Shown here: positions 1,325 through 18,507 of the stretch, one piece after another
How positions within the stretch are numbered: position 1 is the stretch's first letter
How the letters are laid out: each line of letters begins with the position of its first letter
Virus record (IMG/VR): IMGVR_UViG_3300042889_001503
Location: 124,001-188,000 of that record
Reading direction: 5' to 3' (one strand)
DNA: 64,000 bases
Translations under genes and position numbers: made by a program
The notes under the pieces: model-generated
Told to the model about the DNA's origin: nothing
The model's database searches: none
What the model saw: the letters and a program-made list of their open reading frames with translations, nothing else

Positions 1325-1332
1325 TATTTATT
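1325..1332 (+). promoter_or_regulatory. TATTTAT upstream motif (putative phage late promoter)
   Basis: TATTTATT 13 nt before the ATG at 1346; same motif recurs before many structural or leader-bearing genes. Confidence 0.55.
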
Positions 1333-1345
1333 AAAAAAGATAAAA

Positions 1346-4300
1346 ATGTCAAAATCTTATAGAATAAGAACAAAGGTCGGTGTTGACACTTCAGTTAAAG
1401 TATTAATTGACCAAGAGTTCGAACATTTAGAAATATTATCCTTAAAAATATTACAAACAGACATCTATACTAGACAATGTGCTGATTATGGTGTTATTGT
1501 TGGACGTGTTAGTGTTAATAATGGATTTGGTGTTCCAAATGCCAAAGTATCTATCTTCATACCTTTAGATAGTAAAGACCAAGCTGACCCAATTATTTCT
1601 GAGTTATATCCGTATAAATCATTGTTAGATAATAATGATGATGGTTATAGATATAATTTACTACCCTATAAACCATCATATAGTGCTCACGTTCCTACCG
1701 GGACATTTTTCACTAGAACGGATGTTTTAACTAACCCAACTTTAATTGAAGTTTACGACAAGTATTATAAATATAATGCGGTTACAAACGATAGTGGTGA
1801 TTATATGATTTTTGGGGTTCCTGTTGGTGCTCATCTAATTGTTTTAGATGTTGATTTGTCTGACATTGGAGAATTTTCATTATCACCTCAAGATTTGATT
1901 AGAATGGGTCTTGCAACAGAAGCTCAAGTATCCGGAACAAATTTTAAATCATCAAATAATTTAAGAGAATTACCACAAATTGTATCGGTAAATAGAAGTA
2001 TTGAGGTTGAACCATTATGGGGACAACCTGAAATTTGTAATTTAGGTATAACAAGAACAGATTTTGATTTAAGTAGTGAGGCGAATGTTGATATTCGACC
2101 AACATCTATTTTTATGGGTTCTATAATTTCTGACTCAGATACTAACGCATTAAAGTCTAATTGTAAACCAACTAACAGGTCGGGGTATCAATGTAGTTTA
2201 ACTACGGGTCCCGGTGAAATATTGGCGATTAGACAAACAATACAACAAGATTCTAACGGGTTACCTATTCTTGAAAATTTTAGTTTAGAGGGGGGTGGTA
2301 AAGTTATTGATGAAAACGGAACTTGGTTGGTAGATGTCCCAATGAATATGGATTACTATGTAACCAATGAGTTTGGAGAACAAGTTCTTTCAAATGACCC
2401 TGAGGTTGGTATCCCAACTAAAGCAAAATATAGATTTAAAGTAAAATGGTCTCAATCACCATCATTATCAGACCTTACTAAAAGAGCTTATTTTTTAGTA
2501 CCAAATATTAGAGAATATAGTTCCAATCAATTTGAATCGTATGCTTTTAGCGTTGATTGGAATGATTATGGAAATACTCAAATGATTCAAGACGCTATAA
2601 ATTGTGATGATAAGTTTTACATAATGCAGTATAATAAAGTTTATACTGTATCAGAATTTATATATAATCATAGAGGGGGTAGCGGAAGTGAAAGGTATGT
2701 CGGTATTAAAAATATCTTAGAGGAATCTTGTGAAACTGAAAATAATAAATTTCCAACAAATGATGGTAATTTTAGGTTTGACATACTATACATAATTTTT
2801 ATGTTTTTCAGTATAATACTTACACCGGTATTCTTTGCGTTAATATTGGTGATGCACATTTTATATTTTGTTGTGTGGTTATTAAGGCTTATAGTTATAC
2901 CTGGATTAATTGTTTGGTGTGCTATTAGTATTATTAACTACGGGATATTGATTCTTGGTTGTGTTCCATATGCTTTAGGGATGATTGCGGGGTATTTGGC
3001 TATGATAGTTATATATATAATATTAGGACTTCTTTTGGCGTATATTTTAAGGCTGTTATGGAAACTTGACTTAAAAGGGATAAAAGTTCCTATATTAACA
3101 TATCCGGATTGTGACCTTTGTTCTTGTGAACAAGGACAAAGTGTTAATGAAAACCCTGACCCGGATGGTAATGATGAGGATGAAGAAAATGAATTAGTAC
3201 CGTGTCCAACAATATCGTCAGACCCTAAACCAATATCACCATTAAATGCTGGTTTAATAAGTGTTCCATTATCTACCTTTGCAACGTTTAAATTACCATC
3301 CTTTAATGCTGAGACAAATCCAAATGGGTTTCCGGGTCAAAGAAAAGTTATTTTTGCTAATGATTTTGCGGGGTATCAATTTGATAATCAATATGGGTCA
3401 TCCACTATTGGAGCACCTTACTTACAAAGTGAGGTTATTGCTGTGGGTGAAGGGGGTGATAGTACATCTTTTGCGTATGATTGGTTTACTAACGCATTAC
3501 CAATGGCGGATAGAATTAACTTATTTAATGTTAAAGCGAAATATTTTAATAGTGGTACAACTAATCCGGGAGGTGGTGTTAATAGAATTAATGTTACTTT
3601 TGACGAAGCACGTAATCCGGGTAAATTTCATAAAGATAATACTATTGTAATATTATGTGATAAATCAACTGCTAGAAGATTAGTTGCGGGAGAAATGTTG
3701 GCTTTTCAAAATCCGACTTTTAGTAAAGACCCAAATTTAACGGGAGGTATTAAAAATATATTTAATAACAACGCAATTACAGGAACAACATATACAGGTG
3801 ATACAACGGTGACAGTTAATTACGCACATCCTAACGGTATTAGTAGTATGTTATCAACTACTTATGATGTTAGAGTATTTGATGATGCTGGTCCATATAG
3901 TGCAAAAACAACTACAAATACCCATAAATTCCCTATTGATATAGAATATTTCCAAGTTATTACTGCTATGACATACAGTAATTTTAGTGGTCAATGTGTA
4001 AATACTTTACCTAATTCATTAAATAAAAAATACTTCAGAAATGAGTCGACTTTGTTTCAATTGTTCTCAACTATTAATGGAGGAAGACGGGATTGGACGG
4101 GTACTATTTTTAACCCAAATTGTTATTATCGACCTAATGGTAACACACATCCAGACCCAATACCTTTTGGAGTTCAAAAGTATGATTCGATGAATTATGT
4201 TAGAAACCGTAATGAAAACGTTGTTGTGATATTAAATAGAGGTGTTGACCCATATACCAGTAAAATACCAATTAAATATGGTATTGGTAAACTTTTTGGA

Positions 4301-7000
4301 CATCAAAATGAAAGTGATGTTGAGATTAGTGGTTACTATAGAATGAATATTCCGATTCAGGGTAAATTTTTAAATATTAGTCACGATGGTAATGAAAGGG
4401 CGGTTACAACACCATTACCTGCTTGGACACCATTACCAACTGGTAGCACACCAAATTATGTGACAGGGGCTACTTGGGTAGGTGGAATCCAACCAACGGT
4501 AGGTGGAAATATTAATACTGAAACAGGGTACGCTATTGGACAAAATTTATATTTTAACTCATTTTCTTATTGTCCTAATCAAAAAGAAACTTGGCAATTT
4601 GTTACAGGTTATACTCAGGGAGTGACAGCGTCTACTTGGACGCAAATGACATCTAGATTCTCAGGGTTTAATTCAAACTTAATTAGTTATTATTCTAACT
4701 TAGATAATCGTTCACTATTTTACGCACCAAGTTGTAAAAACGCACAACCTTTACGTGGGACAACTCAAACAAGTGATGATTCACTATCAAATGGAGCTTA
4801 TCCGAATACACCTACCGTAAGTAATGGTGCAAGTTCTTCACCATTTGGTTTACGAATAAGTTTAAATAATGATTTTACTAAAGCGTATACATACACTCCT
4901 TATGGGATGATAAGGGATTTTAATGGTTACTGTTATATGCAGGTACCTACTCCAGATAATCCAAGTGTCTATAATGTGACAGGTAGGACTGAAGGATATA
5001 TTCCTAATGAGATTGTTGAGGGAGCATCAATGATGCTCATGGACATTCAATATTTAAGAATTTCCCTTAATTTCGACCCATCCGATACTCCATATTGGTA
5101 TCAGTACGGTGATTATCGATTTCCTCCAACTCGAGTTTTAACGTATTATTATTCACCAATCTATAGTACGGGAAATACTATGAATTTTACATTAGGTAGG
5201 GTTGGTTCTTATTCTGGTGCTAGTAATAATCAAATTGTTATGAGAGGCGATAGATTACCGACAGGGACTGTTGTTGAGGAATACTGTTGTAATGGACGTG
5301 TTTTACAAAAAAACAGTAAATTAACGTTGTATTTAATACCTTCGACAGGTGTAATCGGGATAAATTCAATAGCGGGGTCAACAGGGTCTTTTGGTAACGG
5401 GTCTTTAGATGATGTTAGGGAAGATTTAGTTGGTTCTCCAAAAATAAATCGAGTTATAAACACTTTTACCTGTGCTGGTTCCGTTAATTTGGACTGTTAT
5501 GGTTGTACTCCAAGTCCTGTAAATAGTACTATATTCGTAAGACCGAGAGGTGGTGATTGTCTCCAATATGAGGGTGAAACGATTTTTGTGGGTGGATGTT
5601 ATGTCTTTATTACAACAATATTTATTTCTTTATTTAGAGATTGGGAATTAATGTTTGAATGGATTGCTCGAAATATGGTGATGCTTGGTGCGTGTAGAAA
5701 TGTGTTTTCTCACAGATTTAATAATAATTGGGTGAATGGAGTATTATATGCTTTTCCATTTAAAAATGAGATTAGTGGGTTTAGTTCTCCAACATCAAAT
5801 CCACCAAACTTTCCGCAAGGAAAGAAATGTAATAGTGTTATTATGTATCATAATCCATCTAGAAGTTTTTATTATAGATGTTCACCTTATGACTCCAATT
5901 CAGGTGAATTTAGTGCTGACCTAAAGTATCCAACAACAATTATGGATTTGGGTCCTAGAGCGGACTTTTTACAAGAATTGGTGATGTCTGACGAGTATGA
6001 CGGATACTTGGTTAATAAGTTAACAAGTTCAACGTATTCTCACGTTGATGAAATCCTTAATTTATTTATTATAAGTAGATTTATGGATAATAACTTTTTA
6101 AATAATTTGTTAGGGGCGTTTAACATATTTGCGTATTTTCAAAATAGTAGAAAAGGGAAATATTTAATTGATGCTGATTACTCTCAATTAATTTCAATTA
6201 ATTCTGAATTAGGTGTTGCAGCATTCCAATCGTCGAATTATCCTGATGCACCAACAACGGTAGGTGCGGGTGGTTTTGTAACAGGTATTCGATATAAAAT
6301 TTTGTCGGGTGGAACGGCTTCTAACCCAACAGATTTTACGTCGATTGGAGCACCTCCGGGATACGTTGCGGGAACAACAACATTTATCGCAACAGGTCCC
6401 GGAACAGGTACAGGAACAGCATTGGTTGACCCTGGTATTCAAAACCCTATTTTCTTTGATTGTAAGAATTCTTTGGGAATATTCTTTTCATCGGATACTC
6501 AAATTAGAGATTATGTTTCACCAAAAAGAACAATAATAAATCCAACAGGGACAACATCAAGTATTTGTACATTTAATAATTTTACAGTTTATTCTCAAGA
6601 AGTTCCATTATCACAATGGAGAATTGATGGTGGTGGTGAGCATGCGGGAAGTATTTTTGGTGGTGAATCAAATGATTGGGATTTTCAAACAATTTTTTCT
6701 TCAAAATATCAATCTTTGGATAGGTTATTACCGGTATCTAGATATTTTAGAACTACTAATCAGTCACAAAATGACTTTTTTAAAGGTTACATATACGCAG
6801 TCACTAATGGGAATAGTTTACCAACTTACCAAAATAACTCAATAACTGCAAAACCACAATATTGGAGTCAAAATACTCCTGAAACAGATTTGATTACTGT
6901 CGGAGCGCCATTTCACTTTTATTTTGGACTTAGAAGAGGAGCGTCGGCATTTGATAGATTTAGAACAAAATGGATAAACACTAGTAACGTTATAAATTAA
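1346..7000 (+). CDS. Large (1884 aa) putative virion/baseplate protein with internal multi-pass hydrophobic segment
   Basis: Long ORF heading the structural operon. N-terminal carboxypeptidase-regulatory-like beta segment (GVIVGRV...GVPNAKVSIF...TNDSGDYMIFGVPVG). About 95 aa hydrophobic stretch; Cys-rich. Confidence 0.6.
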   Translation: MSKSYRIRTKVGVDTSVKVLIDQEFEHLEILSLKILQTDIYTRQCADYGVIVGRVSVNNGFGVPNAKVSIFIPLDSKDQADPIISELYPYKSLLDNNDDGYRYNLLPYKPSYSAHVPTGTFFTRTDVLTNPTLIEVYDKYYKYNAVTNDSGDYMIFGVPVGAHLIVLDVDLSDIGEFSLSPQDLIRMGLATEAQVSGTNFKSSNNLRELPQIVSVNRSIEVEPLWGQPEICNLGITRTDFDLSSEANVDIRPTSIFMGSIISDSDTNALKSNCKPTNRSGYQCSLTTGPGEILAIRQTIQQDSNGLPILENFSLEGGGKVIDENGTWLVDVPMNMDYYVTNEFGEQVLSNDPEVGIPTKAKYRFKVKWSQSPSLSDLTKRAYFLVPNIREYSSNQFESYAFSVDWNDYGNTQMIQDAINCDDKFYIMQYNKVYTVSEFIYNHRGGSGSERYVGIKNILEESCETENNKFPTNDGNFRFDILYIIFMFFSIILTPVFFALILVMHILYFVVWLLRLIVIPGLIVWCAISIINYGILILGCVPYALGMIAGYLAMIVIYIILGLLLAYILRLLWKLDLKGIKVPILTYPDCDLCSCEQGQSVNENPDPDGNDEDEENELVPCPTISSDPKPISPLNAGLISVPLSTFATFKLPSFNAETNPNGFPGQRKVIFANDFAGYQFDNQYGSSTIGAPYLQSEVIAVGEGGDSTSFAYDWFTNALPMADRINLFNVKAKYFNSGTTNPGGGVNRINVTFDEARNPGKFHKDNTIVILCDKSTARRLVAGEMLAFQNPTFSKDPNLTGGIKNIFNNNAITGTTYTGDTTVTVNYAHPNGISSMLSTTYDVRVFDDAGPYSAKTTTNTHKFPIDIEYFQVITAMTYSNFSGQCVNTLPNSLNKKYFRNESTLFQLFSTINGGRRDWTGTIFNPNCYYRPNGNTHPDPIPFGVQKYDSMNYVRNRNENVVVILNRGVDPYTSKIPIKYGIGKLFGHQNESDVEISGYYRMNIPIQGKFLNISHDGNERAVTTPLPAWTPLPTGSTPNYVTGATWVGGIQPTVGGNINTETGYAIGQNLYFNSFSYCPNQKETWQFVTGYTQGVTASTWTQMTSRFSGFNSNLISYYSNLDNRSLFYAPSCKNAQPLRGTTQTSDDSLSNGAYPNTPTVSNGASSSPFGLRISLNNDFTKAYTYTPYGMIRDFNGYCYMQVPTPDNPSVYNVTGRTEGYIPNEIVEGASMMLMDIQYLRISLNFDPSDTPYWYQYGDYRFPPTRVLTYYYSPIYSTGNTMNFTLGRVGSYSGASNNQIVMRGDRLPTGTVVEEYCCNGRVLQKNSKLTLYLIPSTGVIGINSIAGSTGSFGNGSLDDVREDLVGSPKINRVINTFTCAGSVNLDCYGCTPSPVNSTIFVRPRGGDCLQYEGETIFVGGCYVFITTIFISLFRDWELMFEWIARNMVMLGACRNVFSHRFNNNWVNGVLYAFPFKNEISGFSSPTSNPPNFPQGKKCNSVIMYHNPSRSFYYRCSPYDSNSGEFSADLKYPTTIMDLGPRADFLQELVMSDEYDGYLVNKLTSSTYSHVDEILNLFIISRFMDNNFLNNLLGAFNIFAYFQNSRKGKYLIDADYSQLISINSELGVAAFQSSNYPDAPTTVGAGGFVTGIRYKILSGGTASNPTDFTSIGAPPGYVAGTTTFIATGPGTGTGTALVDPGIQNPIFFDCKNSLGIFFSSDTQIRDYVSPKRTIINPTGTTSSICTFNNFTVYSQEVPLSQWRIDGGGEHAGSIFGGESNDWDFQTIFSSKYQSLDRLLPVSRYFRTTNQSQNDFFKGYIYAVTNGNSLPTYQNNSITAKPQYWSQNTPETDLITVGAPFHFYFGLRRGASAFDRFRTKWINTSNVIN

Positions 7001-7001
7001 G

Positions 7002-8879
7002 ATGGATGATATAAGAATAGTATTAGGGTCGTTAAGGTATAAAACGTCGACGGACACTAATTTATCGATACCAACACCATTGGTTCAAAACACAAAAAAT
7101 CTTGAAGAATTTGATAGGAGTATTGATGTTAATTTAGTTCAAATATTTAACGATGAAAGGCAAAAATCGACAACATTTAGACCGGTTTGTAAGTTTCAAG
7201 TGTTATTTAATAACTCATATACGGGTTCAACAAATTATGAACCATTAGAAAATAATTTATATTACATTAATGAAACTGCGTTAACTTTAAGACAATGTGG
7301 GGCGTTGTCTACCTCAGTAAGTTGGGAAGGATTTCCCCAATATGATGAGTTTGATTTTATTAGAAGTGATTACAATGTTTCGGGATACACGGTTCCAATA
7401 CCATCAACAATTCCAAATGGACAACCACAGGTTCACGTTGATTTTGTCGCTAGAAGTGCTTCAACCTATAATTGGAATCATTTTGTTAGTTATCCATATA
7501 AGAACATAGATAAGGTTATGAATTTTTATGATGGTACCGGGTCTAATGTTCCTACTTTTGTTTGGAATGCTGTTGATGGGATTCCTTTTATAATTAATAG
7601 TAAGGATAATGACGGTAATGATATTATGGAGGGAGGGAACCCTATAATTCAATTTAGATGTCCCGTTAAACACGGATTATCGGAATCTGAATTTGTAAAA
7701 ATAAAATTAAATAATGGGTATGTTAATACATATCAAGTATTTTCTTTTGGAGACGGTTTGCCGGGAACTAATGAGTATATCTTTAACATATTTAATATCG
7801 GATACGGGTCTTCAATTTTTGTGGATGACCAAACTACAGGAACATTTAAAAGAGTTATAAATTATGAAAACCCTAATGATACTACATCCAAATATTATGT
7901 GATTCAACATAAAATAATTACAGATGTTAATGACGCTGTTTTAGTTAATGCCGGGTTTGAAAAAAATATATTTGGGACTAAAAAGAAATTTGAAAGTCCT
8001 GTTTATACACCAAATAATGTAAAGAGAGTTTCAATTAAAGAAAATGCTCAATCATATACTTTATCGTTTAATAAAGATATTGATGTTAGTGAGTTGCGTG
8101 ACAATCAAAAACGACCAATTAGTGAGTTATATATTACAACAATTTGGAAAGGGTATTTTGGATTAACTTTTGGGGGTGTTGATAGTAATGGTAATGATGT
8201 GGGATTAAAACAGGGGTTTGATTTTAATTTACCACCGGATACTCAGTTTAATAACCCACAAACTTGGTGGGATGTGGATACGGTAGAATCAAATTTTGTG
8301 GATTCAAATAATAACGCATATCCAACGGGGTATTATAACACACCTTATGGTGGTAATGTGAATGGAATAAATATTGATTTCACATATCTTAAATCACTTA
8401 AAAGTGGTGACACAATAAATGGTAATTACTGTGAGTGGAATGATTATGAACAAAAAGAAAGAGTTATTTCTGAAATGTATCATAAGTTTACATTTAATAC
8501 TGATGTGTTTGATATGAGTTTGGTAGATATGAATAATAATCAATTTGGTTATTACTACAAACCAAATAGACGAATGAAAATAAGAGGGTTTTCTGATTAT
8601 ATAGAAACAGGTAGCATTAACAATATGGTGGGTGTTCCGGATTACTCATATTTTTCAACAACATACAATTCATTTATTTGGAGAGATTTATATACCTATG
8701 GTTTTAATGATGGTCTCGGTAATGGTGTTGATTATCCATTTTTAAATGGAAAACATTATCCATATGAAAATTTTATTTTTAGAATAATACCGGAAGGAAC
8801 TAATTATATAGAAAGTACTTTAAATAATTACGCAACTCTTTATGGAGCTGCTCAACCAACAAAAGACGATTGTGAATAA
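7002..8879 (+). CDS. Putative virion structural protein (625 aa)
   Basis: Tightly packed in the structural operon; beta-rich N/Y/F composition. Confidence 0.55.
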   Translation: MDDIRIVLGSLRYKTSTDTNLSIPTPLVQNTKNLEEFDRSIDVNLVQIFNDERQKSTTFRPVCKFQVLFNNSYTGSTNYEPLENNLYYINETALTLRQCGALSTSVSWEGFPQYDEFDFIRSDYNVSGYTVPIPSTIPNGQPQVHVDFVARSASTYNWNHFVSYPYKNIDKVMNFYDGTGSNVPTFVWNAVDGIPFIINSKDNDGNDIMEGGNPIIQFRCPVKHGLSESEFVKIKLNNGYVNTYQVFSFGDGLPGTNEYIFNIFNIGYGSSIFVDDQTTGTFKRVINYENPNDTTSKYYVIQHKIITDVNDAVLVNAGFEKNIFGTKKKFESPVYTPNNVKRVSIKENAQSYTLSFNKDIDVSELRDNQKRPISELYITTIWKGYFGLTFGGVDSNGNDVGLKQGFDFNLPPDTQFNNPQTWWDVDTVESNFVDSNNNAYPTGYYNTPYGGNVNGINIDFTYLKSLKSGDTINGNYCEWNDYEQKERVISEMYHKFTFNTDVFDMSLVDMNNNQFGYYYKPNRRMKIRGFSDYIETGSINNMVGVPDYSYFSTTYNSFIWRDLYTYGFNDGLGNGVDYPFLNGKHYPYENFIFRIIPEGTNYIESTLNNYATLYGAAQPTKDDCE

Positions 8880-9720
8880 TAACAGTTATAAATTTACCTT
8901 ACCAAAAGGTGACGACAAATATATCAATATACCGATTGAAATTAAATGGGATTTTCTTGGGCAAGGTGATGCCGTTGAAGAATATCAACAAAATGTTGTT
9001 GAGGATATTGTTGGATTTCCGGGGGATTTTGAAGTATTAAGATTTGCTCACGCACCGTATAGTAGTGATACAAAAACGGATATTAAATACGATTTTCATT
9101 TTTTTAGTGACTTACAGTTGGATTCAAATGGTAATTTAGTTCCAACGGTTCCTGTTAATCCATCTTCGTTAGTAACAACTGCTCCGTCAAGTTATTGGGT
9201 GACTAGTTATGTTCCGGAAGGATTTACCATAAGTGAAATATATTATTATGTAAAACCATTTACTAAATCTTTCTTTAAATTGGATTTTTATGATAGTAAA
9301 GATACTATCACTCAAACTAATTATTTTACAGTGATATTACCTGTGCAACAAGGGTTTACGGTAACAGAAGTTGTGAGTTCGTATAAACCTTCAGTTCAAA
9401 TTAAAATACCATCATTTAAGTTAGATTATGTGGGTGACAAAGAAGGGTTCTTTCTATATTGGTTAAGAAATAAAAAATTCTTAGACATTAGTAAATTTTA
9501 TATGACAGCAAAATTTTTTGATGCTAGATTGGGTGTTTTTGTTAAAATGACAAATACACCACAAAGTAATATTACATCAAAATTTATGTTTGACCCTGAG
9601 ATTTATTTTTATTATGAGGTAAGGTTAAATTATAATGAAAAAACATATGAAGTTTGGGATAATAGTGTAAGAAGAGGAACATCAGTTCCAATAAAATGGT
9701 ATGAATATATAAATCCATAA
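8842..9720 (+). CDS. Putative virion structural protein (true start may be GTG 8872)
   Basis: Operon packing; ORF track. Confidence 0.55.
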   Translation: MELLNQQKTIVNNNSYKFTLPKGDDKYINIPIEIKWDFLGQGDAVEEYQQNVVEDIVGFPGDFEVLRFAHAPYSSDTKTDIKYDFHFFSDLQLDSNGNLVPTVPVNPSSLVTTAPSSYWVTSYVPEGFTISEIYYYVKPFTKSFFKLDFYDSKDTITQTNYFTVILPVQQGFTVTEVVSSYKPSVQIKIPSFKLDYVGDKEGFFLYWLRNKKFLDISKFYMTAKFFDARLGVFVKMTNTPQSNITSKFMFDPEIYFYYEVRLNYNEKTYEVWDNSVRRGTSVPIKWYEYINP

Positions 9721-9721
9721 T

Positions 9722-10918
9722 ATGACAGAAAGAGATTATCATATTAAAATATCACCGGAATTTATTAGTGGAGACATTTTTAAAGTTAATTATAATGCTG
9801 GAACTATAACGGGGTCAGGTATTGTTAATAAGTGTTGTATTATTCCTGCAGAAACCTTTAAAATTGATTTAGTGGGGGCATCTTACATTTATTCGTCAAT
9901 GACAGAAGTCTTGTCAGGAGGTACAAACACTACTAATATTTCGTCGGCGACAACCAAATCAGGTACTTCTTTATTAACCGGATTAACTATCCCAATTTTA
10001 TTAACAGAAACTGTGACAGACATAGGATATTATTCTGTATTTGATGGTATGGTGTTACAACAAGAAACTATGACGAATTTTATCTTTTCGGGCAATAGTT
10101 CAAACTCAAAAAGGTGTTATGTTTATAATACATCGGATATTGAGTTTAAAAAGTATTTGGAGTTTTCTACATACAAGATTGATTGGGGTGATGGGCAAGT
10201 TAGTGCGGTAACATCAACATCAATGTACCATGATTATGCTAATAATACGGCATATACAATCACTATGTCAGGTATGAGCCCTTGGGGGACAAATGTAATA
10301 ACAAAAACGGTTAACACACCATTCACGGGTGTAACAATAACAAATCCTAAAGGGGTTGCTTATTTTAAACCTGCGGGTGGTAATTGGTCAAATACGTTAT
10401 TATCGTATGATTATATATTCAGTGGAGATTCAAGTTGTGGTGCAACATTAAATGATATTAATTTATTTAACCCAATAACATCAATTCCATTTTTAATAAC
10501 GGGATATACAATGTCATCGTTAAGTGATTTAAAACAATATGGAACGACTCAATATATACCTAATCAATGGGTGACGGGTAATACTGGTACGATTGGTAAA
10601 TATTCAGGAGTAAGTTCAAATGGTTTATATACCGCCTATACAATTAATGATATTGATTACTATGATTATTCAAATGGGACAACAATTTTTGTTGTAAAAT
10701 CTTCGGGTTTAACTTCTGATATGTTAGTTTGTGAAAAAATAGTAAAAAATGATTTATTAATGAATATAATTGATGAAGCAGAAGTACAATCCAACATATT
10801 TATAGAACGAGGGAAGAACTCAGCACTTGAGAGAGTTGAAAGATTGGGTGAGGTTGACAACGTAGGTGATTTAGTCAAATACGGATATAAATTTTTTAAT
10901 GTAAATAATAGTATATAA
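9722..10918 (+). CDS. Putative structural protein with PKD-like domain
   Basis: YKIDWGDG...HDY...YTITMSG matches the PKD/Ig-like pattern; T/S/G-rich. Confidence 0.55.
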   Translation: MTERDYHIKISPEFISGDIFKVNYNAGTITGSGIVNKCCIIPAETFKIDLVGASYIYSSMTEVLSGGTNTTNISSATTKSGTSLLTGLTIPILLTETVTDIGYYSVFDGMVLQQETMTNFIFSGNSSNSKRCYVYNTSDIEFKKYLEFSTYKIDWGDGQVSAVTSTSMYHDYANNTAYTITMSGMSPWGTNVITKTVNTPFTGVTITNPKGVAYFKPAGGNWSNTLLSYDYIFSGDSSCGATLNDINLFNPITSIPFLITGYTMSSLSDLKQYGTTQYIPNQWVTGNTGTIGKYSGVSSNGLYTAYTINDIDYYDYSNGTTIFVVKSSGLTSDMLVCEKIVKNDLLMNIIDEAEVQSNIFIERGKNSALERVERLGEVDNVGDLVKYGYKFFNVNNSI

Positions 10919-10919
10919 T

Positions 10920-11828
10920 ATGGCTACAGGAACATATGGGACAATAAGACCGGCTGACGTAAGTCCGGAAGATGTTGAGATAATTTTAAATTATACTCCA
11001 TCAAGAGATGAAACAGATAATTTTGTTTTAACAAAATTGGATGCGAAGTCTATTTTAAGACCTTATTATAATAATGATACTACAGGTGTGAATAATGGTA
11101 TTGAGATATTAGGTGGTTTATATAATTTAAAATTACCTGCTGAACAATTTAATCAAATTGGGATTTATACGATTTTTATTAGACCTGCTCAAATAAGAAC
11201 AACAATATTAGATTGTGGTGTTTTATCGGCACTTCCTAATGTTAAAGGATTAATTTTTGATTTAAATTCTGTTCCATCTACTTATAGAAACAAATTTGTT
11301 AGTCAAGGGTTAGTTGGTTTTAGAATTGAATATCTAAATGCTGATGGGACAAAGATACCTAATTTCTTTAGAATTATTACCTCATCATTCTTTTGTGAAC
11401 CGGTTGTTCAAAACTTAACAAATTCATCTCAAAAGGCTATTAGATATCGATATACAGATAATAACACTAATTTATTGTTTTGTACATTAACACCATCTTC
11501 GGCACCAACAAATAAGCCAAACGCCACACCATATATTGGTCAACCAAATCAAAATGTTATTATAACAAATACTTTCTTTAATCCAATAACTTTGGATATT
11601 GAAATTGGAGAACACGATTTCTCAACATTGGCTATTGCTTTATATGGTAATCAAACTAAATCTATTGATGATGGTGTGTATACACTATACGATAATGCTA
11701 ATAACATATACAAACAATACAACTTATATGAGATTAGAGACCAATTTAACGAGTTATTATATGAAGTTAGACAAGACAGAGGGAATAACATAGATTTTAG
11801 TAAAAACTTTACAAATATAACCCAATAA
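10920..11828 (+). CDS. Putative structural protein (302 aa)
   Basis: Operon packing, TAATG overlap with the next gene. Confidence 0.55.
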   Translation: MATGTYGTIRPADVSPEDVEIILNYTPSRDETDNFVLTKLDAKSILRPYYNNDTTGVNNGIEILGGLYNLKLPAEQFNQIGIYTIFIRPAQIRTTILDCGVLSALPNVKGLIFDLNSVPSTYRNKFVSQGLVGFRIEYLNADGTKIPNFFRIITSSFFCEPVVQNLTNSSQKAIRYRYTDNNTNLLFCTLTPSSAPTNKPNATPYIGQPNQNVIITNTFFNPITLDIEIGEHDFSTLAIALYGNQTKSIDDGVYTLYDNANNIYKQYNLYEIRDQFNELLYEVRQDRGNNIDFSKNFTNITQ

Positions 11829-14800
11829 TGGCAATAGAAAAATTTACGTGTCCACCACAGACAGCATCCGGTGCAGGTACATTCTCCGATAATTTAGTTG
11901 GATTCCAACTTGTTGCGGGGGGTGGATTGACGCAAGGAAATTTTGAGTTCACTAGAGGAGTTAAGGAAAAATCAAATAGAACTTTTACAACAGGAGCATT
12001 CTCAAACCCTATTAACTTAGATAGTATGGGGGTTAATAGTGTTGTTCAATCAAAGGTGATATTTGAAAACAATTTTAAAGTTTATCCTAATTTTGATTTA
12101 ACTGAAGTAACTAATTTTACATCATACGGTTCAATGGTTAAAAGAATTTCAACATCGGTTGAAATGATTATTAGTAAATTTCCGGCAGCGTTGGAGGTTA
12201 CTTTTATGGATGAAAACTATTTAACCGGAGCTACTGCGACAAACATTTCATATAATCCAATAGTTAATGAAACAAGTATTGATTTAGATATTTCAAGAAT
12301 TAGAAACCCTTTTGATATTGATTTTACTGTTAACGCAACTAGAAATTTAGAACTAAGAGAGATTCAAGTTTCTCCTTTAAGAAATATGACAAATCAATTT
12401 GCCAAATACTCCTTATATTATGGTGGTGTTGGATTTGATGTTACTCATATTGAGCCAACAACGTCATCAACTACAGGAACCCTTAGAATATACCTTAAAG
12501 GTGATGTTTTTCCGGGTCAAACTCAGACACAAGATGATTTAGTTATTAGACCAAATGATTATCAGGTTAATAGAGTTCTTAATGAGGATTTGGATGAAGT
12601 TCAACGATTTTTATTAAATAGAAATGTTGTTCCTATTTATACAGCAACTTTCCAAGTTCCAAATGAAAACGATGATGGAACTTTTTATATTCAAAATAAG
12701 TTAGTGACTTGGCCGTTATATGGTAATTGGAATTTGGATATATTAACCAATTCCTTTACAATATATTTAACAACATTAAATGAGATTAGTTTGTCTTTTG
12801 ATGGATATCAAACAAATCTTGTTTCAAGATTTTTAACAACTGATTCACTTAAAGAATTTGACACCTCTGACCAAAAAATTGAAAAAATATTACAAATTTA
12901 CGGTAGAAGTTTTGATGAAACTAAGAAATTCATTAATGGTTTAGCTTATATGAATTCGGTGAATTATAACACCGGAAACGATATTCCGTCTCAATTACTA
13001 AAAAATTTATCACAAACATTAGGTTGGGCGACAAATATGTCCCCAATTACTAACGAGGACTTTTTAGGTTCGGTATTTGGTCAAAAGAATGTTGATAAAT
13101 CCGCTTTTAGTGGTGTAGGACAGTCTCAAACGCCTGACGAGTTAAACTACCAATATTATAAGAATTTAGTTCTTAATTCCGCCTATTTGTTTAAATCAAA
13201 AGGGACTAGAAAATCCATAGAAACTTTAATGAGGTTAATTGGTGCTCCGGACGCTTTAATTGATTTTAATGAGTATGTTTGTTTAGCTGACCAAAGAATT
13301 AATATGTCAGAGTTCGACTCTCAATATGCTAAAATATCGGGTGGAACATATTCTAAAACATTACCGACATTAGAGAGTGGATATACATTCAATATACAAG
13401 GGGTTCAATATTCTGGTTTTACAACAACATCAGTTCTTCAAGAAGTTGATTTAAGTAAAGGAGATTATCCAATTAGTGATAGTGGATATCCTATGTCACC
13501 GGGTAATTCTGAAACATATTTTTATCAGATGGGTGCTGGTTGGTTTGAATCAACACCAAAACATAGGTCATTAGAACAACCGGATTTAACTAATAGTGTG
13601 TTCACAGGTTCAAATCCTAATTATCAAACAAAATTAGCTCCATTTACTTATGGGCAAGAATATTTGAATGTATATAAATCATTCCCATTTACTGATTTAG
13701 GTTATAACATAAGAACAGCCGTAGATAACAATAAAACGTGGGTTGATAGTGAAATTGGGGATAGAAATAATTTAGATGGTGGGTATAACGCATTATATAA
13801 TGTTGGGGCAGAAGGTTTAGTTATTAATGTTAAAAATATTGATTTATACTTAAACCCCTCTCAAGGATTATCTTACGATGTTTGGTATATGTCAAGACAA
13901 TACAACTTCCCAATTAATAATCAAGGTTTGGGTTATGTTGCACCAACAAGATGTAACCCTAATCCGGTATCGTCTTATCCACATAACGGTGGTGTTGACT
14001 CAACCCTTATTAATCCCCAACCAAGGAAAGAAACCTTTTTTGAGTTTGCTCAAACATTTTGGAAAAACACAATTAATGTTAGAAATAGACAATTTGCAAC
14101 AGATGGTGGAACAAGTGGATATCCAACGTTATCATCAATATATTGGAATTATTTACAATCAGAATCTTTAGCTGGAATTCCAAATGATAACTTCACATAC
14201 AAAACAATGATTGAGTATGTTGAAGGTATGGGTGATTATTGGATTAGATTAGTTGAACAAATGATTCCGGCAACTACAATTTGGAATACGGGTGTTAAAT
14301 TAGAGAATTCTATTTTTCATAGACAAAAATTTGTTTGGAGAAGACAAAGAGGGTGTGCGTTGGTACCAATTATTTGTAAACCTTGTAAATTCACGGGTAG
14401 TGTTTATCAACTTAATTGTGATGTTTGGTATACCTTATGTAATCGATATCCGGAAAATGTAATGGAATTTGATAGTTTTAGTGGTGTTTTTAGTGATGTT
14501 ATTAATCAGTGGGAAACCGATAATGGAATAGATGTTGGGTCGTGTTATAGAGACGGAACAATTGTTAGTGAATGGTTTGTTGACATAAGTATAAATGGAA
14601 CTAATATTATTCAAGATGTGTTCTTTGATGGGGTAGGATACTCAAACCCGGTTGGTTACCTTTGTAGTGATGCGATGCCTTGTGTATCTGCATGGGAAAC
14701 AGCGTTAAATAATAGTCTTTCTACTTTAATATTAATGGGGTATGATTATCGTTATGAACGTTCAGTTAATGATGAAATAGGTTCACCACCAACAAAAGTT

Positions 14801-14893
14801 AAGATATGGAACATAAATTGTTCTGTTTCTCCACTAAATACAACTATAAGTATAAATGTAGGAATAAACTTTAATATAACTTGTCCACAATAA
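11828..14893 (+). CDS. Putative baseplate wedge / tail protein I-like (1021 aa)
   Basis: 'LLKNLSQTLGW' and 'YLFKSKGTRKSIETLMRLIG' resemble the KGT motif region of P2 gpI / baseplate wedge proteins. Confidence 0.55.
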   Translation: MAIEKFTCPPQTASGAGTFSDNLVGFQLVAGGGLTQGNFEFTRGVKEKSNRTFTTGAFSNPINLDSMGVNSVVQSKVIFENNFKVYPNFDLTEVTNFTSYGSMVKRISTSVEMIISKFPAALEVTFMDENYLTGATATNISYNPIVNETSIDLDISRIRNPFDIDFTVNATRNLELREIQVSPLRNMTNQFAKYSLYYGGVGFDVTHIEPTTSSTTGTLRIYLKGDVFPGQTQTQDDLVIRPNDYQVNRVLNEDLDEVQRFLLNRNVVPIYTATFQVPNENDDGTFYIQNKLVTWPLYGNWNLDILTNSFTIYLTTLNEISLSFDGYQTNLVSRFLTTDSLKEFDTSDQKIEKILQIYGRSFDETKKFINGLAYMNSVNYNTGNDIPSQLLKNLSQTLGWATNMSPITNEDFLGSVFGQKNVDKSAFSGVGQSQTPDELNYQYYKNLVLNSAYLFKSKGTRKSIETLMRLIGAPDALIDFNEYVCLADQRINMSEFDSQYAKISGGTYSKTLPTLESGYTFNIQGVQYSGFTTTSVLQEVDLSKGDYPISDSGYPMSPGNSETYFYQMGAGWFESTPKHRSLEQPDLTNSVFTGSNPNYQTKLAPFTYGQEYLNVYKSFPFTDLGYNIRTAVDNNKTWVDSEIGDRNNLDGGYNALYNVGAEGLVINVKNIDLYLNPSQGLSYDVWYMSRQYNFPINNQGLGYVAPTRCNPNPVSSYPHNGGVDSTLINPQPRKETFFEFAQTFWKNTINVRNRQFATDGGTSGYPTLSSIYWNYLQSESLAGIPNDNFTYKTMIEYVEGMGDYWIRLVEQMIPATTIWNTGVKLENSIFHRQKFVWRRQRGCALVPIICKPCKFTGSVYQLNCDVWYTLCNRYPENVMEFDSFSGVFSDVINQWETDNGIDVGSCYRDGTIVSEWFVDISINGTNIIQDVFFDGVGYSNPVGYLCSDAMPCVSAWETALNNSLSTLILMGYDYRYERSVNDEIGSPPTKVKIWNINCSVSPLNTTISINVGINFNITCPQ

Positions 14894-14896
14894 AAA

Positions 14897-17800
14897 ATGC
14901 CTTGTAATTTAACATATAACGCTAGTATAACAGGAGATTGTGCTAATACTAATTCAGGTTCGTTCACCATTGATATTATTGGTGAAGCTCCTGATTATAC
15001 CATCCAATGGTTATCACCATCGGCAACAACTATTTCATTAGGTCCAAGCGCGACAACATATAACGCAACAAGTTTATCCGCAGGAACGTATTCATTCAAC
15101 ATTATTGATAGTTGTGCTCCAACCAATACAATATTACCGGTAAATATTATTATATCTAGTGGAACCTGTGTTACAATAACATCAGCAACCAACACATTAT
15201 GTGGGTTCAATAATGGTTCTCTAATTGCGTCAACAATTAATGCGTATGATATATCAACTTTTAGTTTATATAATAATACAACAGGGTTTGTATCCTCAGG
15301 GGCATCATATTCAAACACATTTGAATTCACAACAATACCTTATGGAACTTATTATGTGATTGCTGATGACGGAGGTGGTTGTACCGGGAAGTCTGAGACT
15401 TGTATTATTAAAAATTCAACAACAATTGATTATGGTTTCTACATTGTAAACGATGCGGGATGTGCAGTTAATTCCGGAAAAATGTTTATTTCAGGATTAA
15501 CAGGTAACCCACCATATACGTATTTATGGTCTGACGGTAGTGTTGGGGATTCTATTTCTAATTTATCGACAGGGACATACTCTGTGACAGTTACAGATAA
15601 TACAGGATGTAGTATAAGTAAAAGTGGGTTTGTTGGTAAAATAGAACCCGTTGGTTTTGGTGTTGCTTATTTAACACAACCGACTTGTTTTAGTAGTGAT
15701 GGTGAAGTTAGTATAACTATAACCGGCGGTACACCACCATTTTATTACTTAGGGTCAAATGGTGTAACAAATATTACTTTTGACAGAACTGTTGTCTTTA
15801 GTGGATTGGGTGCTGGAGGATTTACAATTCAAGTTACTGATGCCGGGTTATGTACGTTTACAGCAACAGTTACTCTACAAGTTCCTATGGGGATATCTAC
15901 AGTTTCTGTTAATACAAGAAACTCAAAGTGTAATGATTCATCAGGAGCAATAGGTCCTATTCAAGTTTTTGGTGGGGTTGCTCCTTATACATTTACTTTA
16001 ACAGATTCTGACGGTAATTCAGACAGTCAAACACCATCAGATAGTGGTACTTGGATTTTTGATTTTTTATCGTCAGGAACATATTCATTAACAGTATCTG
16101 ATTCAGGTTCTGCTTTATGTGTATTTATGGGGACTTACGTCATTAATAATGATGTTGTGTATGATTTAACAGTTACCACAACCGGAACAACTTGTAACGG
16201 AAAAGATGGGTCGGTTAAATTGGAAATAACTTCAGGTGGAACTCCACCTTATTTGTATACAATTAATGGTAAATCTATATCAACTTCATTTACGTCATAC
16301 ACTTTTACTAATTTATTTTCAGGTAATTATATTGCAAATGTGACAGACGCATTGTTATGTAATCAATCATCTCCGTTTACCATTGATGGTTCAAATACTA
16401 TTGATTTTCATTTATTAAGTACTGACTCTATTAATAGTAATGGTTCGTTAACATCTTATATAACAAACGGGACACCACCGTTTACATTATATTTTGATGG
16501 AGATACTGTTGGAACTACTGTTATGGAAATAACTGATTTACCTCCGGGTGATTATGAGGTTAGAATTGTAGATAGTTCAGGGTGTTCAAAAGCGAAAAGA
16601 ATGGGTATTAGGGGAGATAAAGTCTACGAAAACCAAGTAGGTTATTCTAATGTTTGTTTAGGTGAATTAAACAAACCTATGAAAATTTACTCAGGTCCTA
16701 GACAATATTTAAATGAGGGATATGCCGAATTAATTATAGGGAATGAAAATTGTCTTTTAACTCAAACAATATTCTCAGCGTCAACAGTCATTGGTGACTG
16801 TGTTAATTCCGCAACATTCTATACAGGGTCTACATTGCAGGATTACCCTTCAGATAATTTATGGTACTCAACAATCGCATCATTGATTGAATCGTGCCCT
16901 CAAATTGGTCCGGGAAATGTTGATATTAATCCATTAACAAATGAAATAACAATCTCAACAAATTGTGAACCGGAATCGTTACATAATTCTAATGTTTTAA
17001 TTAAAATGAGAATTGATTACGATATTGAATGTGAATTTGGTTGTCTTACACCAACACCTACTCCTACAAATACTACGACAGTTACGCCTACCCAAACTCA
17101 AACACCAACTAAAACTCCGACAAATACGCCAACTCAAACACAAACACCAACTCATACTCCAAGTCAAACACCAACAATTGGGTCTATACCTCCAACTCCA
17201 ACACCAACACCAACAAATACGGCTACAGTTACGCCTACAAATACTCAAACCCCTACTCAAACTAAAACTCCTACTCAGACTCCAACTAAAACTCCGACAA
17301 ATACTCCAACTCAAACTCAAACCCCAACTCAAACAATGACAATGACTCCAACACCGTCTTCTAAGAAAACGTATTACGCTTATTTAATATGCGGAGAAAG
17401 ACCGAATAAAACTACTGTAGTTATTCAACCGGTTCCTGCGGTTCCGGGTAACGTTGTTGGTGGTGTTATTTTGGACTTTACAAATAAACTTTGTTGGGAA
17501 TTGAAAGAGATTTCTAGTGATTTAGCTCAATTAGAGAACAATTGGGGTGGAACAACTTATGATTATAATTGGTTTGACGATGTGTCGCCAACAATATATA
17601 CAGGTAGTGATGGGGTTAAACCTTGTGAAGAATGTGTTAAACTGTTAGATACTGTTATTGTTCCTGTTAAATCAAACTGTCCTACTAAATTAAGAAATTG
17701 GAGTGATTGTGCTAGGTCTAACGCAAGTGGTAATATATATATTAATGATATTTTAATCTATTCATTTGATTCAACCTTTGACGCTAATGTATTTATTAGT

Positions 17801-18469
17801 ACTTTAGGTACAAATGAGGGTGACGTTGTAAAAATTGTATTAACACCAAATGTAACTAATAGTGTGGTTACTTTAAATGTTACGTATAATGGAGCATCAG
17901 TATTTTCTCAAACAAGTAGTAATAGTGAAATTGGTTTTGTGTATACGGTTAGGTGTGATAAAAAATCAACCACTCAATACAACATTGATATCTTTTCAAC
18001 TTGTAAAAAGGGAGAACCATCAATAACATTATACAGTAACACATATACTGAAGGAAATGTTATTCCAACAGCGTATTATTCATCGTTTTGTTACCAATTT
18101 AATGACTCTCCTGAGATGAATTGGATTTTAAATTCGTTCGATGTTTCAAATGTTGTGAGTTATGAAATACTTTGTGAAGATATAGATGCTTCAGGTAGTA
18201 GTCCTGATGGATATTTCATCCATTGGTGGGTGACGGATATTGACCCGACCCAATTAAACATACCTATAAATGGTAATTGGAATAGTGGTAATGTTCAACC
18301 AACAGATTATGGTTCAGGTGATAATTTTAATGGATGGAATGGACCTTGTCCACCTTCAAATCCGGTTCATAATTATAGAATAAGAATATCGGCAACATTA
18401 TTAAATGGTAATGTTATTGATAGTAACTACTCAACATTTACTGCAGGTTGTATATACCCATTCTGTTAA
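14897..18469 (+). CDS. Putative fibre/adhesin: SprB-like repeats, Pro-Thr linker, C-terminal YbhB/YbcL (PEBP) domain
   Basis: Repeated C..dG.i...GGtpPY.Y....L..G.Y.V.VTD..GC units. (PT/QT)n at about 17048-17357. C-terminus '[45 protein letters not shown]' matches the PEBP pattern. Confidence 0.7.
17048..17357 (+). repeat. Pro/Thr-rich low-complexity coding repeat
   Basis: TPTPTPTNT...[23 protein letters not shown], degenerate at DNA level. Confidence 0.9.
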
Positions 18470-18471: not shown

Positions 18472-18507
18472 AATAAAAAAACCCCCTTAATTGGGGGTTT
18501 TTTTATT
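18472..18507. terminator. Bidirectional intrinsic terminator
   Basis: AATAAAAAAACCCCC-ttaatt-GGGGGTTTTTTTATT between converging genes. Confidence 0.9.

What the first reader, a model, noticed from the sequence alone, without database searches (positions are those of the whole stretch)
14897..18469. SprB-repeat / PT-linker / PEBP (YbhB-YbcL) fusion in a virion-module protein
Seen: about six SprB-like repeats, a 100 aa PT stalk and a terminal domain (about 18020-18469) with PEBP motifs (D.DA, HW, GPCPP, H.Y). Known: SprB repeats belong to Flavobacterium gliding adhesins; PEBP domains bind anions or phospholipid head groups and are usually stand-alone. Inference: a fibre built from host adhesin modules that displays a PEBP as a receptor- or lipid-binding tip, possibly engaging the gliding/T9SS surface.
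Basis: partly seen in the sequence, partly recalled or inferred. Interest (0 to 1): 0.6.

Follow-up and report, generated by a model that had tools for sequence, protein, structure and literature searches.

The report
Phage tail fibre tipped with PEBP
The last gene of the baseplate operon of an uncultured 272-kb lake-water jumbo phage encodes a beads-on-a-string fibre whose exchangeable end piece is a PEBP domain, a fold not described so far as a phage host-recognition module, and the same end piece turns up on T7-type, crAss-like and other phage fibre proteins.

Summary
ORF 14897-18469 (1190 aa) has seven SprB-type repeats (Pfam scores five), a Cys-rich domain, a 106-aa Pro/Thr linker, two small domains and a C-terminal PEBP domain (Pfam E 5.6e-12; fold Z 15.6 to CT736, 14.4 to YbhB). 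The canonical pocket residues are present.

The genome is a 272-kb IMG/VR myovirus with a tail sheath. The gene closes a nine-gene, same-strand run that begins with Baseplate_J and ends at a terminator.

In 45 related loci residues 1-706 are constant and the end varies: PEBP, a Fib_succ_major domain, three unknown modules, or nothing. Against the closest relative, 90% DNA identity stops at base 18010 and resumes at the stop codon, so exactly the PEBP cassette is replaced.

An exhaustive search finds this PEBP type mainly in large multidomain proteins. These include proteins with the T7 tail-fibre N-terminal domain and a protein in a crAss-like structural block.

Best reading: an accessory or primary host-adhesion fibre whose PEBP pocket binds an anionic envelope group. 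Virion incorporation, ligand and host are inferred; Shine-Dalgarno-free leaders suggest Bacteroidota. The gliding/T9SS idea is untested. No paper or GenBank phage record with such a fibre was found.

The parts
2..319 (+). 3' end of the Baseplate_J / gp6-like wedge gene (whole gene G000:122481-124319, 612 aa), first gene of the same-strand run that ends with the fibre gene
   Evidence: PF04865 over cut-off (E 2.3e-9; E 1e-7); weak Gp6-like_1st hit
351..14893 (+). Seven tightly packed genes (308, 1884, 625, 292, 398, 302, 1021 aa; gaps of 68 nt or less, or overlaps) between Baseplate_J and the fibre gene. Presumed baseplate/fibre components of unknown family.
   Evidence: ORF map. No Pfam, PHROG or PDB-sequence hits. 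Same order in L009, L010 and about 40 IMG/VR loci. A language-model lead to Baseplate_wedge clusters for the 1021-aa protein scored only 0.88.
14897..16612 (+). Residues 1-572: seven SprB-type Ig-like repeats, the constant proximal shaft
   Evidence: PF13573 E 9.2e-20; positions; seven-unit alignment; 33-89% identical in 45 loci
16613..17044 (+). Residues 573-716: Cys-rich domain of unknown fold, the last constant module before the linker
   Evidence: No Pfam hit; conserved at 29-86% in all loci with many invariant Cys
17045..17362 (+). Residues 717-822: Pro/Thr-rich linker and first recombination boundary of the family
   Evidence: Composition; degenerate tandem DNA repeats; C-terminal modules differ completely after it in L031, L038-43 and L049-53
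17381..17671 (+). Residues 829-925: small alpha/beta domain A
   Evidence: AF2 model, pLDDT about 85-92; no family hit
17672..18016 (+). Residues 926-1040: beta-sandwich domain B, resembling Gram-positive pilin/Ig domains. It ends in the conserved I-D-I-F-S-T-C motif, the second recombination boundary.
   Evidence: VIA Z about 8 to pilins PitB and Spy0128; sub-threshold Ig_GpJ_C hit, E 0.026; orthologues L034-36 and L046 end here
18017..18466 (+). Residues 1041-1190: PEBP (YbhB/YbcL-type) domain, the exchangeable distal cassette
   Evidence: pocket residues nearly invariant in 38 tips; DNA identity to L010 breaks at 18010 and resumes at 18466
18483..18507 (.). GC-rich hairpin flanked by an A-run and a T-run between the convergent fibre gene and the RuvC-like gene: a terminator-like site that closes the operon
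   Evidence: 1 found, 0.2 expected; sequence

Best explanation
The gene encodes a modular, virion-borne adhesion fibre of an uncultured lake-water jumbo myovirus, probably a phage of Bacteroidota.

Residues 1-716 (seven SprB-type Ig-like beads plus a Cys-rich domain) form the constant shaft and presumably carry the contact to the baseplate. A 106-aa Pro/Thr tether gives reach and flexibility. The distal head is an alpha/beta domain, a pilin-like sandwich and a PEBP domain.

The PEBP is a self-contained cassette that phages exchange by recombination at the domain boundary. It most likely acts as the ligand-binding tip. Its canonical PEBP pocket (Asp1095, His1109, Gly-Pro-Cys 1149-1151, His1158, Tyr1160) would hold an anionic, probably phosphate-bearing, group of the host envelope during reversible adsorption.

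Shown: the architecture, the fold, the genomic setting, the cassette exchange, the recurrence on other phage fibre scaffolds, and conservation of the pocket.

Inferred: incorporation into the virion, binding, the nature of the ligand, and the host.
For: 1. Setting. The genome has a tail sheath (PF04984/PF17482). Baseplate_J heads a nine-gene same-strand run with gaps of 68 nt or less, and the fibre gene is the last member before a terminator-like hairpin. The synteny is kept in a 464-kb contig and about 40 viral contigs.

2. Tip swapping. Residues 1-706 are conserved in 45 loci. After the PT linker or after domain B the end is one of: PEBP; nothing; a repeated unknown module; Fib_succ_major (PF09603, E 9.6e-12); or one of two other unknown modules.

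3. Clean junction. The window and L010 are 90% identical at DNA level up to base 18010 and 92% identical again from 18466. Only the cassette differs.

4. Repeated events. On a tree of the constant part, PEBP tips need at least 4 gains or losses forced by well-supported branches. WIN (PEBP) is sister to L010 (other tip), and L044 (PEBP) is sister to L035 (no tip).

5. Same cassette on other fibres. Three proteins have the Phage_T7_tail N-terminal domain (E 6e-16, 3e-16, 1e-10) and one or two C-terminal PEBPs; one of them follows three large genes, as the T7 fibre gene does. A 1978-aa protein has Ig, PEBP and phage tail Collar domains. Proteins of about 880 aa lie in another myovirus (T4 gp13-like, sheath). 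An N-terminal PEBP protein sits between Crass_capsid and CrAss_Ring/MUZ genes.

6. Fused relatives dominate. Of the 50 best representatives in the exhaustive search, 42 are multidomain. An ESM-Atlas structural neighbour is a 100% viral PEBP cluster.

7. Pocket under constraint. Across 38 tips that are otherwise 45-80% identical, D1095 is kept in 37, H1109 in 36, W1110/G1149/P1150/Y1160/R1161 in all 38, and C1151 and H1158 in 36 each. The two exceptions lose both His and the Cys together.

8. Not a secreted protein. There is no signal peptide (sequence) and no T9SS C-terminal domain.
Against: - No virion proteome or image exists, and no cultured relative was found.
- The seven genes between Baseplate_J and this gene have no recognisable family, and the fold of the adjacent 1021-aa protein failed (pLDDT 44).
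- The protein has no known fibre anchor or trimerisation domain. It starts directly with an Ig-like repeat.
- Orthologues without any tip (L034-36, L046, L054) show the tip is dispensable in some phages.
- Pocket conservation shows constraint, not what is bound.
- The Pfam match covers profile positions 8-100 of 135, so the C-terminal part of a canonical PEBP is shortened.
Confidence: 0.6

Rival explanations
1. It is a dispensable decoration or accessory fibre on the capsid, neck or tail, in the manner of T4 Hoc, phage head fibres or the T5 L-shaped fibres. Such a fibre would increase encounter rates by weak, reversible sticking to cells, particles or polysaccharide, while another protein is the essential receptor binder.
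For: It has Ig-like beads and a mucin-like PT tether without a recognisable trimer motif. Some orthologues lack the tip or the whole distal half (L034-36, L046, L054). The genome has several other PT-linked adhesin-like proteins with DUF285 repeats. The adjacent 1021-aa protein also has a variable Cys-rich C-terminus.
Against: The gene sits in the Baseplate_J operon, not beside capsid genes. The same PEBP cassette occupies the tip position of T7-type fibres, which are the receptor binders of that group. This rival overlaps with the best explanation: it differs in essentiality and site, not in binding.
Confidence: 0.22
2. The PEBP domain is not a receptor binder but a protease inhibitor or shield, as yeast Tfs1 inhibits carboxypeptidase Y. 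It would protect the fibre against secreted host proteases, or use a surface protease as its docking site.
For: The carboxypeptidase Y inhibitor is among the structural matches (1wpx, Z 9.2). From general knowledge, many Bacteroidota secrete proteases through T9SS.
Against: The closest folds are bacterial YbhB/YbcL/CT736 types with no shown inhibitor activity. Swapping with a lectin-like Fib_succ_major domain at the same scaffold fits a binding role better.
Confidence: 0.06
3. The C-terminal cassette is an assembly aid, an intramolecular chaperone for the fibre that is cleaved off, and is therefore not displayed on the mature virion.
For: C-terminal, exchangeable modules of some fibres (endosialidase tailspikes, T5 pb1) are such chaperones (general knowledge).
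Against: There is no similarity to the chaperone family (Peptidase_S74) in Pfam scans. The PEBP also occurs at the N-terminus and internally in other phage proteins. Tip-less orthologues have the same shaft. The anion pocket is conserved.
Confidence: 0.05
4. It is a non-structural protein, made in the infected cell or released at lysis, that changes the host surface or lipid metabolism.
For: Cellular PEBPs are soluble regulators. Virion incorporation has not been shown.
Against: It has no signal peptide, is 1190 aa of Ig-like repeats, lies in the baseplate operon, and shows the mosaic pattern typical of adsorption proteins.
Confidence: 0.05

Closest known systems
Mosaic phage tail fibres / receptor-binding proteins with a constant proximal part and an exchangeable C-terminal tip (T7 gp17 type, T4 gp37/38 type, P2 H type)
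   Same: Position at the end of the baseplate operon; conserved proximal part and swapped distal module with a sharp DNA junction. PEBP tips occur on proteins with the true T7 tail-fibre N-terminal domain.
   Different: This protein has no homology to any known fibre anchor, shaft or tip. The shaft is made of SprB-type Ig beads and a PT tether rather than a trimeric beta-helix or coiled coil. The tip is a PEBP fold.
Bacterial YbhB/YbcL-type PEBPs (PF01161; E. coli YbhB 1fjj, YbcL 1fux, Chlamydia CT736 3n08)
   Same: Fold (Z 14-16), Pfam score over the cut-off, and conserved pocket residues Asp, His-Trp, Gly-Pro-Cys-Pro-Pro and His-x-Tyr.
   Different: About 20% identity. It is fused to a 1040-aa fibre instead of standing alone at 150-190 aa. 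Asp-Pro-Asp-x-Pro is Asp-Ile-Asp-Ala-Ser. The C-terminal third of the profile is shortened. It carries extra Cys. Its nearest relatives are phage multidomain proteins.
SprB gliding-motility adhesin of Flavobacterium johnsoniae and other SprB-repeat surface proteins of Bacteroidota
   Same: The repeat type PF13573.
   Different: Seven repeats rather than hundreds. No signal peptide and no T9SS C-terminal sorting domain. No close bacterial homologue was found. It is encoded by a phage.
Ig-like decoration proteins of phages (T4 Hoc; Ig/FN3/BACON domains on tails and heads)
   Same: Tandem Ig-like domains on a phage structural-module protein. BFVD matches are mostly Ig/FN3-rich phage proteins.
   Different: It sits in the baseplate operon, is much longer, and carries a PT tether and a swappable non-Ig tip.

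Membership tests
PEBP / PBP family (PF01161) | Profile HMM score above Pfam's gathering cut-off | tested here: met
   46.6 bits against 24 on the C-terminal piece; 46.4 bits in the genome scan. Not reported in the full-length scan.
PEBP / PBP family (PF01161) | PEBP beta-fold | tested here: met
   AF2 model pLDDT 85. Foldseek probability 1.0 to YbcL, YbhB, CT736 and Rv2140c. VIA Z 15.6, 14.4 and 12.3, with the next unrelated folds at about Z 8.
PEBP / PBP family (PF01161) | Anion-pocket motifs: Asp-Pro-Asp-x-Pro, His(-Trp), Gly-Pro-x-Pro-Pro, Gly-x-His-Arg-Tyr | tested here: met
   D1095-I-D-A-S (both Pro replaced), H1109-W, G1149-P-C-P-P, H1158-N-Y. These align to YbcL D-P-D-A, H-W, G-A-C-P-P, H-H-Y and are nearly invariant in 38 tips.
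PEBP / PBP family (PF01161) | Complete domain including the C-terminal segment (profile positions 100-135) | tested here: inconclusive
   The Pfam match covers positions 8-100 of 135. Only 24 residues follow. The structural alignment still covers 132-133 residues of CT736 and YbhB.
PEBP / PBP family (PF01161) | Binding of phosphate, phospholipid head groups or other anions | not testable with these tools
   Needs binding assays or a liganded structure.
SprB-repeat proteins (PF13573) | Repeat profile above the cut-off | tested here: met
   70.4 bits against 28, 5 stretches. Seven units by internal alignment.
SprB-type gliding adhesin / T9SS cargo | N-terminal signal peptide and C-terminal T9SS sorting domain (PF18962 or type B) | tested here: not met
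   The N-terminus ([10 protein letters not shown]...) has no hydrophobic stretch. No PF18962 hit at E up to 1 or 10. The C-terminus is the PEBP.
Phage tail fibre / receptor-binding protein | Gene in the tail/baseplate module | tested here: met
   Same-strand packed run from Baseplate_J to this gene, followed by a terminator; the genome has a sheath.
Phage tail fibre / receptor-binding protein | Mosaic C-terminus against a conserved proximal part among relatives | tested here: met
Phage tail fibre / receptor-binding protein | Homology to a known fibre anchor or shaft domain | tested here: not met
   No PHROG or fibre Pfam hit for this protein. Relatives of the tip do carry Phage_T7_tail, Collar and Fibritin_C.
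Phage tail fibre / receptor-binding protein | Presence in the virion and role in adsorption | not testable with these tools
   There is no cultured relative.
Phage tail fibre / receptor-binding protein | Homotrimer | not tested
   The complex prediction was not run, because the report does not rest on oligomer state.

The most novel reading that the evidence does not exclude
PEBP domains form a widespread, so far unrecognised class of phage receptor-binding module. They are spread by cassette exchange among at least four kinds of tailed phages (jumbo myoviruses, a second group of myoviruses, T7-like podoviruses and crAss-like phages). They recognise a phosphate-bearing or other anionic group of the bacterial envelope through the same pocket that cellular PEBPs use. 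This would give the first defined extracellular ligand-binding role for the prokaryotic branch of the PEBP family.
Probability: 0.4. Interest if true: 0.7.

Novelty: new variant of a known kind. Interest (0 to 1): 0.55.

Why it matters
Receptor-binding tips decide phage host range, and only a limited set of tip folds is known. A PEBP tip adds a fold with a small, well-defined anion pocket. That makes the ligand question directly testable: soaks, lipid and glycan arrays, and pocket mutants.

It also bears on bacterial YbhB/YbcL-type PEBPs, whose biochemical function is still unclear. The phage version points to binding of an envelope component.

The family offers a natural experiment, because one scaffold carries at least six alternative ends.

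Fluorescent recombinant heads could be used to fish the unknown hosts of abundant lake-water jumbo phages. This exact gene is present in at least 22 lake-water metagenome runs.

Tried and rejected
- PHROG and Pfam scans of the seven upstream genes and ten downstream genes gave no structural family for the genes between Baseplate_J and the fibre.
- Profile searches of four neighbours against PDB sequences gave nothing below E 0.3.
- The AlphaFold2 model of the adjacent 1021-aa protein from a 21-sequence alignment had pLDDT 44 and was unusable, so it was not searched.
- The ESM-Atlas feature search for that protein gave a lead to Baseplate_wedge clusters at only 0.88. The PF23786 scan of the genome found nothing, and the control genomes did not ring either, so it says nothing.
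- GenBank phage collection: no DNA match. tblastn of the whole protein hits only the SprB part of a 642-kb uncultured phage. No match for the PEBP domain or for two neighbours.
- Bacterial and archaeal genome collection: only a 4.4-kb contig binned into a Polynucleobacter MAG. This was judged too short to name a host, and it conflicts with the Shine-Dalgarno-free leaders.
- Cluster look-up of two relatives gave no organism.
- The BFVD fold search returned generic Ig/FN3 phage proteins.
- The tree of 185 PEBP domains was too poorly resolved (147 columns) to decide between one and several captures from cells.
- Literature: six searches found no paper linking PEBP or SprB repeats to phage fibres.
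- Metatranscriptome contigs of a related phage cover much of the gene, including the PEBP part at about 87% identity. DNA carry-over cannot be excluded, so expression is not claimed.
Full report
**What is there**

The window is bases 124001-188000 of a 272,437-bp IMG/VR virus record (linear, CheckV 91% complete, 32% G+C). ORF 14897-18469 on the + strand is open for 1190 codons.

Pfam finds SprB repeats (PF13573, E 9.2e-20, five stretches). Internal alignment resolves seven units of 73-90 aa over residues 1-572. The weak PEGA, BiPBP_C and SdrD_B hits fall on single repeats and simply reflect their Ig-like, prealbumin-like nature.

The remaining parts, in order, are:
- Residues 573-716: a Cys-rich domain without any family hit.
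- Residues 717-822: a Pro/Thr linker encoded by decayed 12-42-nt tandem repeats.
- Residues 829-925: a small alpha/beta domain.
- Residues 926-1040: a beta-sandwich resembling Gram-positive pilin domains (Z about 8).
- Residues 1041-1190: a PEBP fold.

The last three come from an AlphaFold2 model of residues 830-1190, built from 42 aligned sequences with mean pLDDT 85.

The PEBP call rests on four independent lines:
- Pfam PF01161, E 5.6e-12 on the C-terminal piece. The full-length scan missed it.
- phmmer to E. coli YbcL, E 2.2e-7, with the pocket motifs aligned.
- Foldseek probability 1.0 to YbcL, YbhB, CT736 and Rv2140c.
- VIA-align Z 15.6, 14.4 and 12.3, well above the background of about 8.

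A language-model search also returned only PF01161 clusters.

**Setting**

The genome encodes a contractile-tail sheath (G000:92541-96134; PF04984 and PF17482). It also encodes a Baseplate_J/gp6-like protein whose gene ends at window base 319.

From that gene to the fibre gene there are nine genes on one strand, with gaps of 68 nt or less or with overlaps. The fibre gene is the last. It is followed by a GC hairpin flanked by A- and T-runs, and then by a convergent RuvC-like gene.

The seven genes in between have no Pfam, PHROG or PDB-sequence relatives. A fold of the adjacent 1021-aa protein failed. The virion assignment therefore rests on operon membership and on what follows.

The same gene order is found on a 464-kb contig, on several contigs of 90-300 kb and on about 40 IMG/VR contigs. 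No cultured or GenBank phage is related.

The exact gene is present in at least 22 lake-water metagenome runs.

Only 3.4% of 319 ORFs have a Shine-Dalgarno-like motif, against a background of 6.3%. Leaders are 50-57% A. From general knowledge this is the pattern of Bacteroidota and their phages. Together with the SprB and Fib_succ_major modules and 32% G+C, it makes a Bacteroidota host likely but not shown. A 4.4-kb relative binned into a Polynucleobacter MAG is too short to count.

**Tip swapping**

In 45 related loci the first 706 residues are conserved at 33-89% identity, while the distal part varies. The classes are:

| Distal part | Loci |
|---|---|
| A + B + PEBP | window, L009, L021-28, L030, L037, L044 |
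| A + B, then stop | L034-36, L046 |
| A + B + two to four copies of an unknown ~120-aa module | L010, L033 |
| Fib_succ_major directly after the linker (PF09603, E 9.6e-12) | L031/32 |
| Unknown ~330-aa module | L038-43, L055/56 |
| Unknown ~135-aa module | L050-53 |
| Nothing after the Cys-rich domain | L054 |

The closest relative (L010) is 90% identical in DNA from base 10903 to 18010 and 92% identical again from 18466. Exactly the PEBP cassette is replaced, by 1.6 kb of unrelated sequence.

On a tree of the constant part, the window (PEBP) is sister to L010 (other tip) with full support, and L044 (PEBP) is sister to L035 (no tip). At least four changes of the PEBP state are forced by well-supported branches.

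**The cassette elsewhere**

The word-indexed search found the same PEBP type at the C-terminus of unrelated proteins of about 880 aa and of 1874-2051 aa. One of the 880-aa proteins lies in a different myovirus, next to T4 gp13-like, sheath and DNA polymerase B genes.

The exhaustive search of 1.84 billion representatives gave 377 hits at E ≤ 1e-3 and 51 at E ≤ 1e-10. Of the best 50 representatives, 22 have the domain at the C-terminus, 17 at the N-terminus and 3 internally, all in proteins of 285-1978 aa. Only 8 are short, and some of those are fragments on 1-3-kb contigs. Stand-alone PEBPs of cellular size dominate only further down the list.

Pfam shows the following:
- Three of these proteins carry the T7 tail-fibre N-terminal domain (PF03906; 58.9, 60.0 and 41.7 bits against a cut-off of 25.2) followed by one or two PEBPs. 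One of them also has a Fibritin_C segment.
- A 1978-aa protein combines Ig, PEBP and the phage tail Collar domain.

One T7-type example follows three large genes, as the T7 fibre gene follows the core proteins. An N-terminal-PEBP protein lies between Crass_capsid and the CrAss ring and muzzle genes. The nearest ESM-Atlas structural cluster is a 93-member, 100% viral PEBP family.

In the T7 family the N-terminal domain fixes the fibre to the tail and the C-terminus is the distal receptor binder (general knowledge). A PEBP at that position is therefore the strongest architectural argument for a binding tip.

**Pocket**

Across 38 tips from three scaffolds, the residues that line the PEBP anion pocket are almost invariant:
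- D1095: 37 of 38.
- H1109: 36 of 38.
- W1110, G1149, P1150, Y1160 and R1161: 38 of 38.
- C1151 and H1158: 36 of 38 each.

The loop between them varies. The only two exceptions (P0026, P0027) lose both histidines and the cysteine together, which looks like coordinated loss or change of the site. The T7-type tips keep D-x-D-A ... H-W and G-P-C-P-P ... H-x-Y.

This shows purifying selection on the pocket. It does not show what is bound.

**Mechanism proposed**

The proposed mechanism is a fibre anchored through its constant part to the baseplate, a flexible PT tether, and a head whose PEBP pocket holds an anionic envelope group during reversible adsorption. Candidates for that group are phosphate or phosphoethanolamine on lipid A or core, a phosphorylated or sulfated glycan, or a phospholipid head group.

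Because some orthologues have no tip, the fibre may be accessory rather than essential. This is kept as the main rival, together with a protease-inhibitor role, an assembly-chaperone role and a non-structural role.

The protein itself lacks a signal peptide and a T9SS sorting domain, so it is not a T9SS cargo. No close bacterial source of its SprB repeats was found.

**Comparison and novelty**

By kind, this is a mosaic phage adsorption protein, which is well known. What is new is the tip: a YbhB/YbcL-type PEBP. I found it:
- in no paper of the held library;
- in no record of 50,697 GenBank phages by tblastn.

JGI's automatic annotation already labels many of these proteins 'PEBP family uncharacterized protein'.

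The SprB-bead shaft with a PT tether is also unusual for a baseplate-operon protein. I rate it a new variant of a known kind, with interest 0.55. It would rise to about 0.7 if binding through the pocket is shown.

**Limits**

- There is no experimental evidence for virion incorporation, ligand or host.
- The neighbours are uncharacterised.
- The PEBP domain tree is unresolved.
- Metatranscriptome contigs of a relative cover the gene, but DNA carry-over cannot be excluded.

Noticed in passing
window 10920-11828 (+), 302 aa: This neighbour is far more conserved than the rest of the operon. It is 73-98% identical across loci in which the fibre shaft is only 33-89% identical and the other neighbours 37-97%. 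It has no family hit and is possibly a core baseplate part.
   Followed up: partly
window 11828-14893 (+), 1021 aa: The gene just upstream of the fibre has a strongly conserved first ~840 residues and a variable Cys-rich C-terminal ~180 residues. That C-terminal part is the only moderately confident region of a poor model. It may be a second variable host-contact protein. A language-model lead to Baseplate_wedge clusters scored 0.88.
   Followed up: partly
G000:13829-17017, 21884-25006, 61216-67134, 67338-67658; window 26796-27080 (-): Several other large proteins of the same phage carry Pro/Thr linkers like that of the fibre. Two of them (1062 and 1972 aa) are full of DUF285 repeats, at E 3.7e-127 and 5.9e-97. 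The phage seems to have a whole set of PT-tethered adhesin-like proteins.
   Followed up: partly
window 25122-25784 (-), 220 aa: A small protein on the opposite strand carries one SprB repeat (E 8.5e-7, at the cut-off). It is conserved in the syntenic loci L009 and L010.
   Followed up: no
L019/L031 downstream of the fibre gene, compared with window 18506-25784: In the Fib_succ_major-tipped relatives, the five genes after the fibre gene (217, 744, 566, 813, 199 aa) lie on the same strand and in reverse order compared with the window's minus-strand block (199, 807, 431, 751, 220 aa). This suggests an inversion of the block next to the fibre gene. It is judged by gene sizes only.
   Followed up: no
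P0026 / L021-23, L028, L045: One sub-family of PEBP tips has lost both pocket histidines and the Cys of G-P-C-P-P. The precomputed Pfam list for P0026 names PF18962, the T9SS sorting domain. I did not verify this.
   Followed up: no
window 351-1277 (+), 308 aa: The gene directly after Baseplate_J has weak, sub-threshold alpha/beta-hydrolase hits around residues 139-213 (E about 1e-3). It may be a virion-associated esterase or lipase.
   Followed up: no
L039:12293-13285 and P0042: The unknown ~330-aa tip of L038-43 shares repeated sequence motifs with the long PEBP-tipped protein P0042, which also holds PT/PS linkers and a Fib_succ_major domain. The same few modules seem to be shuffled among several scaffolds.
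   Followed up: no
whole genome G000: Gene starts lack Shine-Dalgarno motifs (11 of 319) and have A-rich leaders with T at position -1 in 60% of genes. TAnnTTTG is only mildly enriched upstream, with 24 sense against 13 antisense in 120 gaps.
   Followed up: partly
window 14897-18469 in runs X23/X24: Freshwater metatranscriptome contigs of a related phage (about 87-95% identical) cover most of the gene, including the PEBP part at 17804-18444. DNA carry-over is not excluded.
   Followed up: partly
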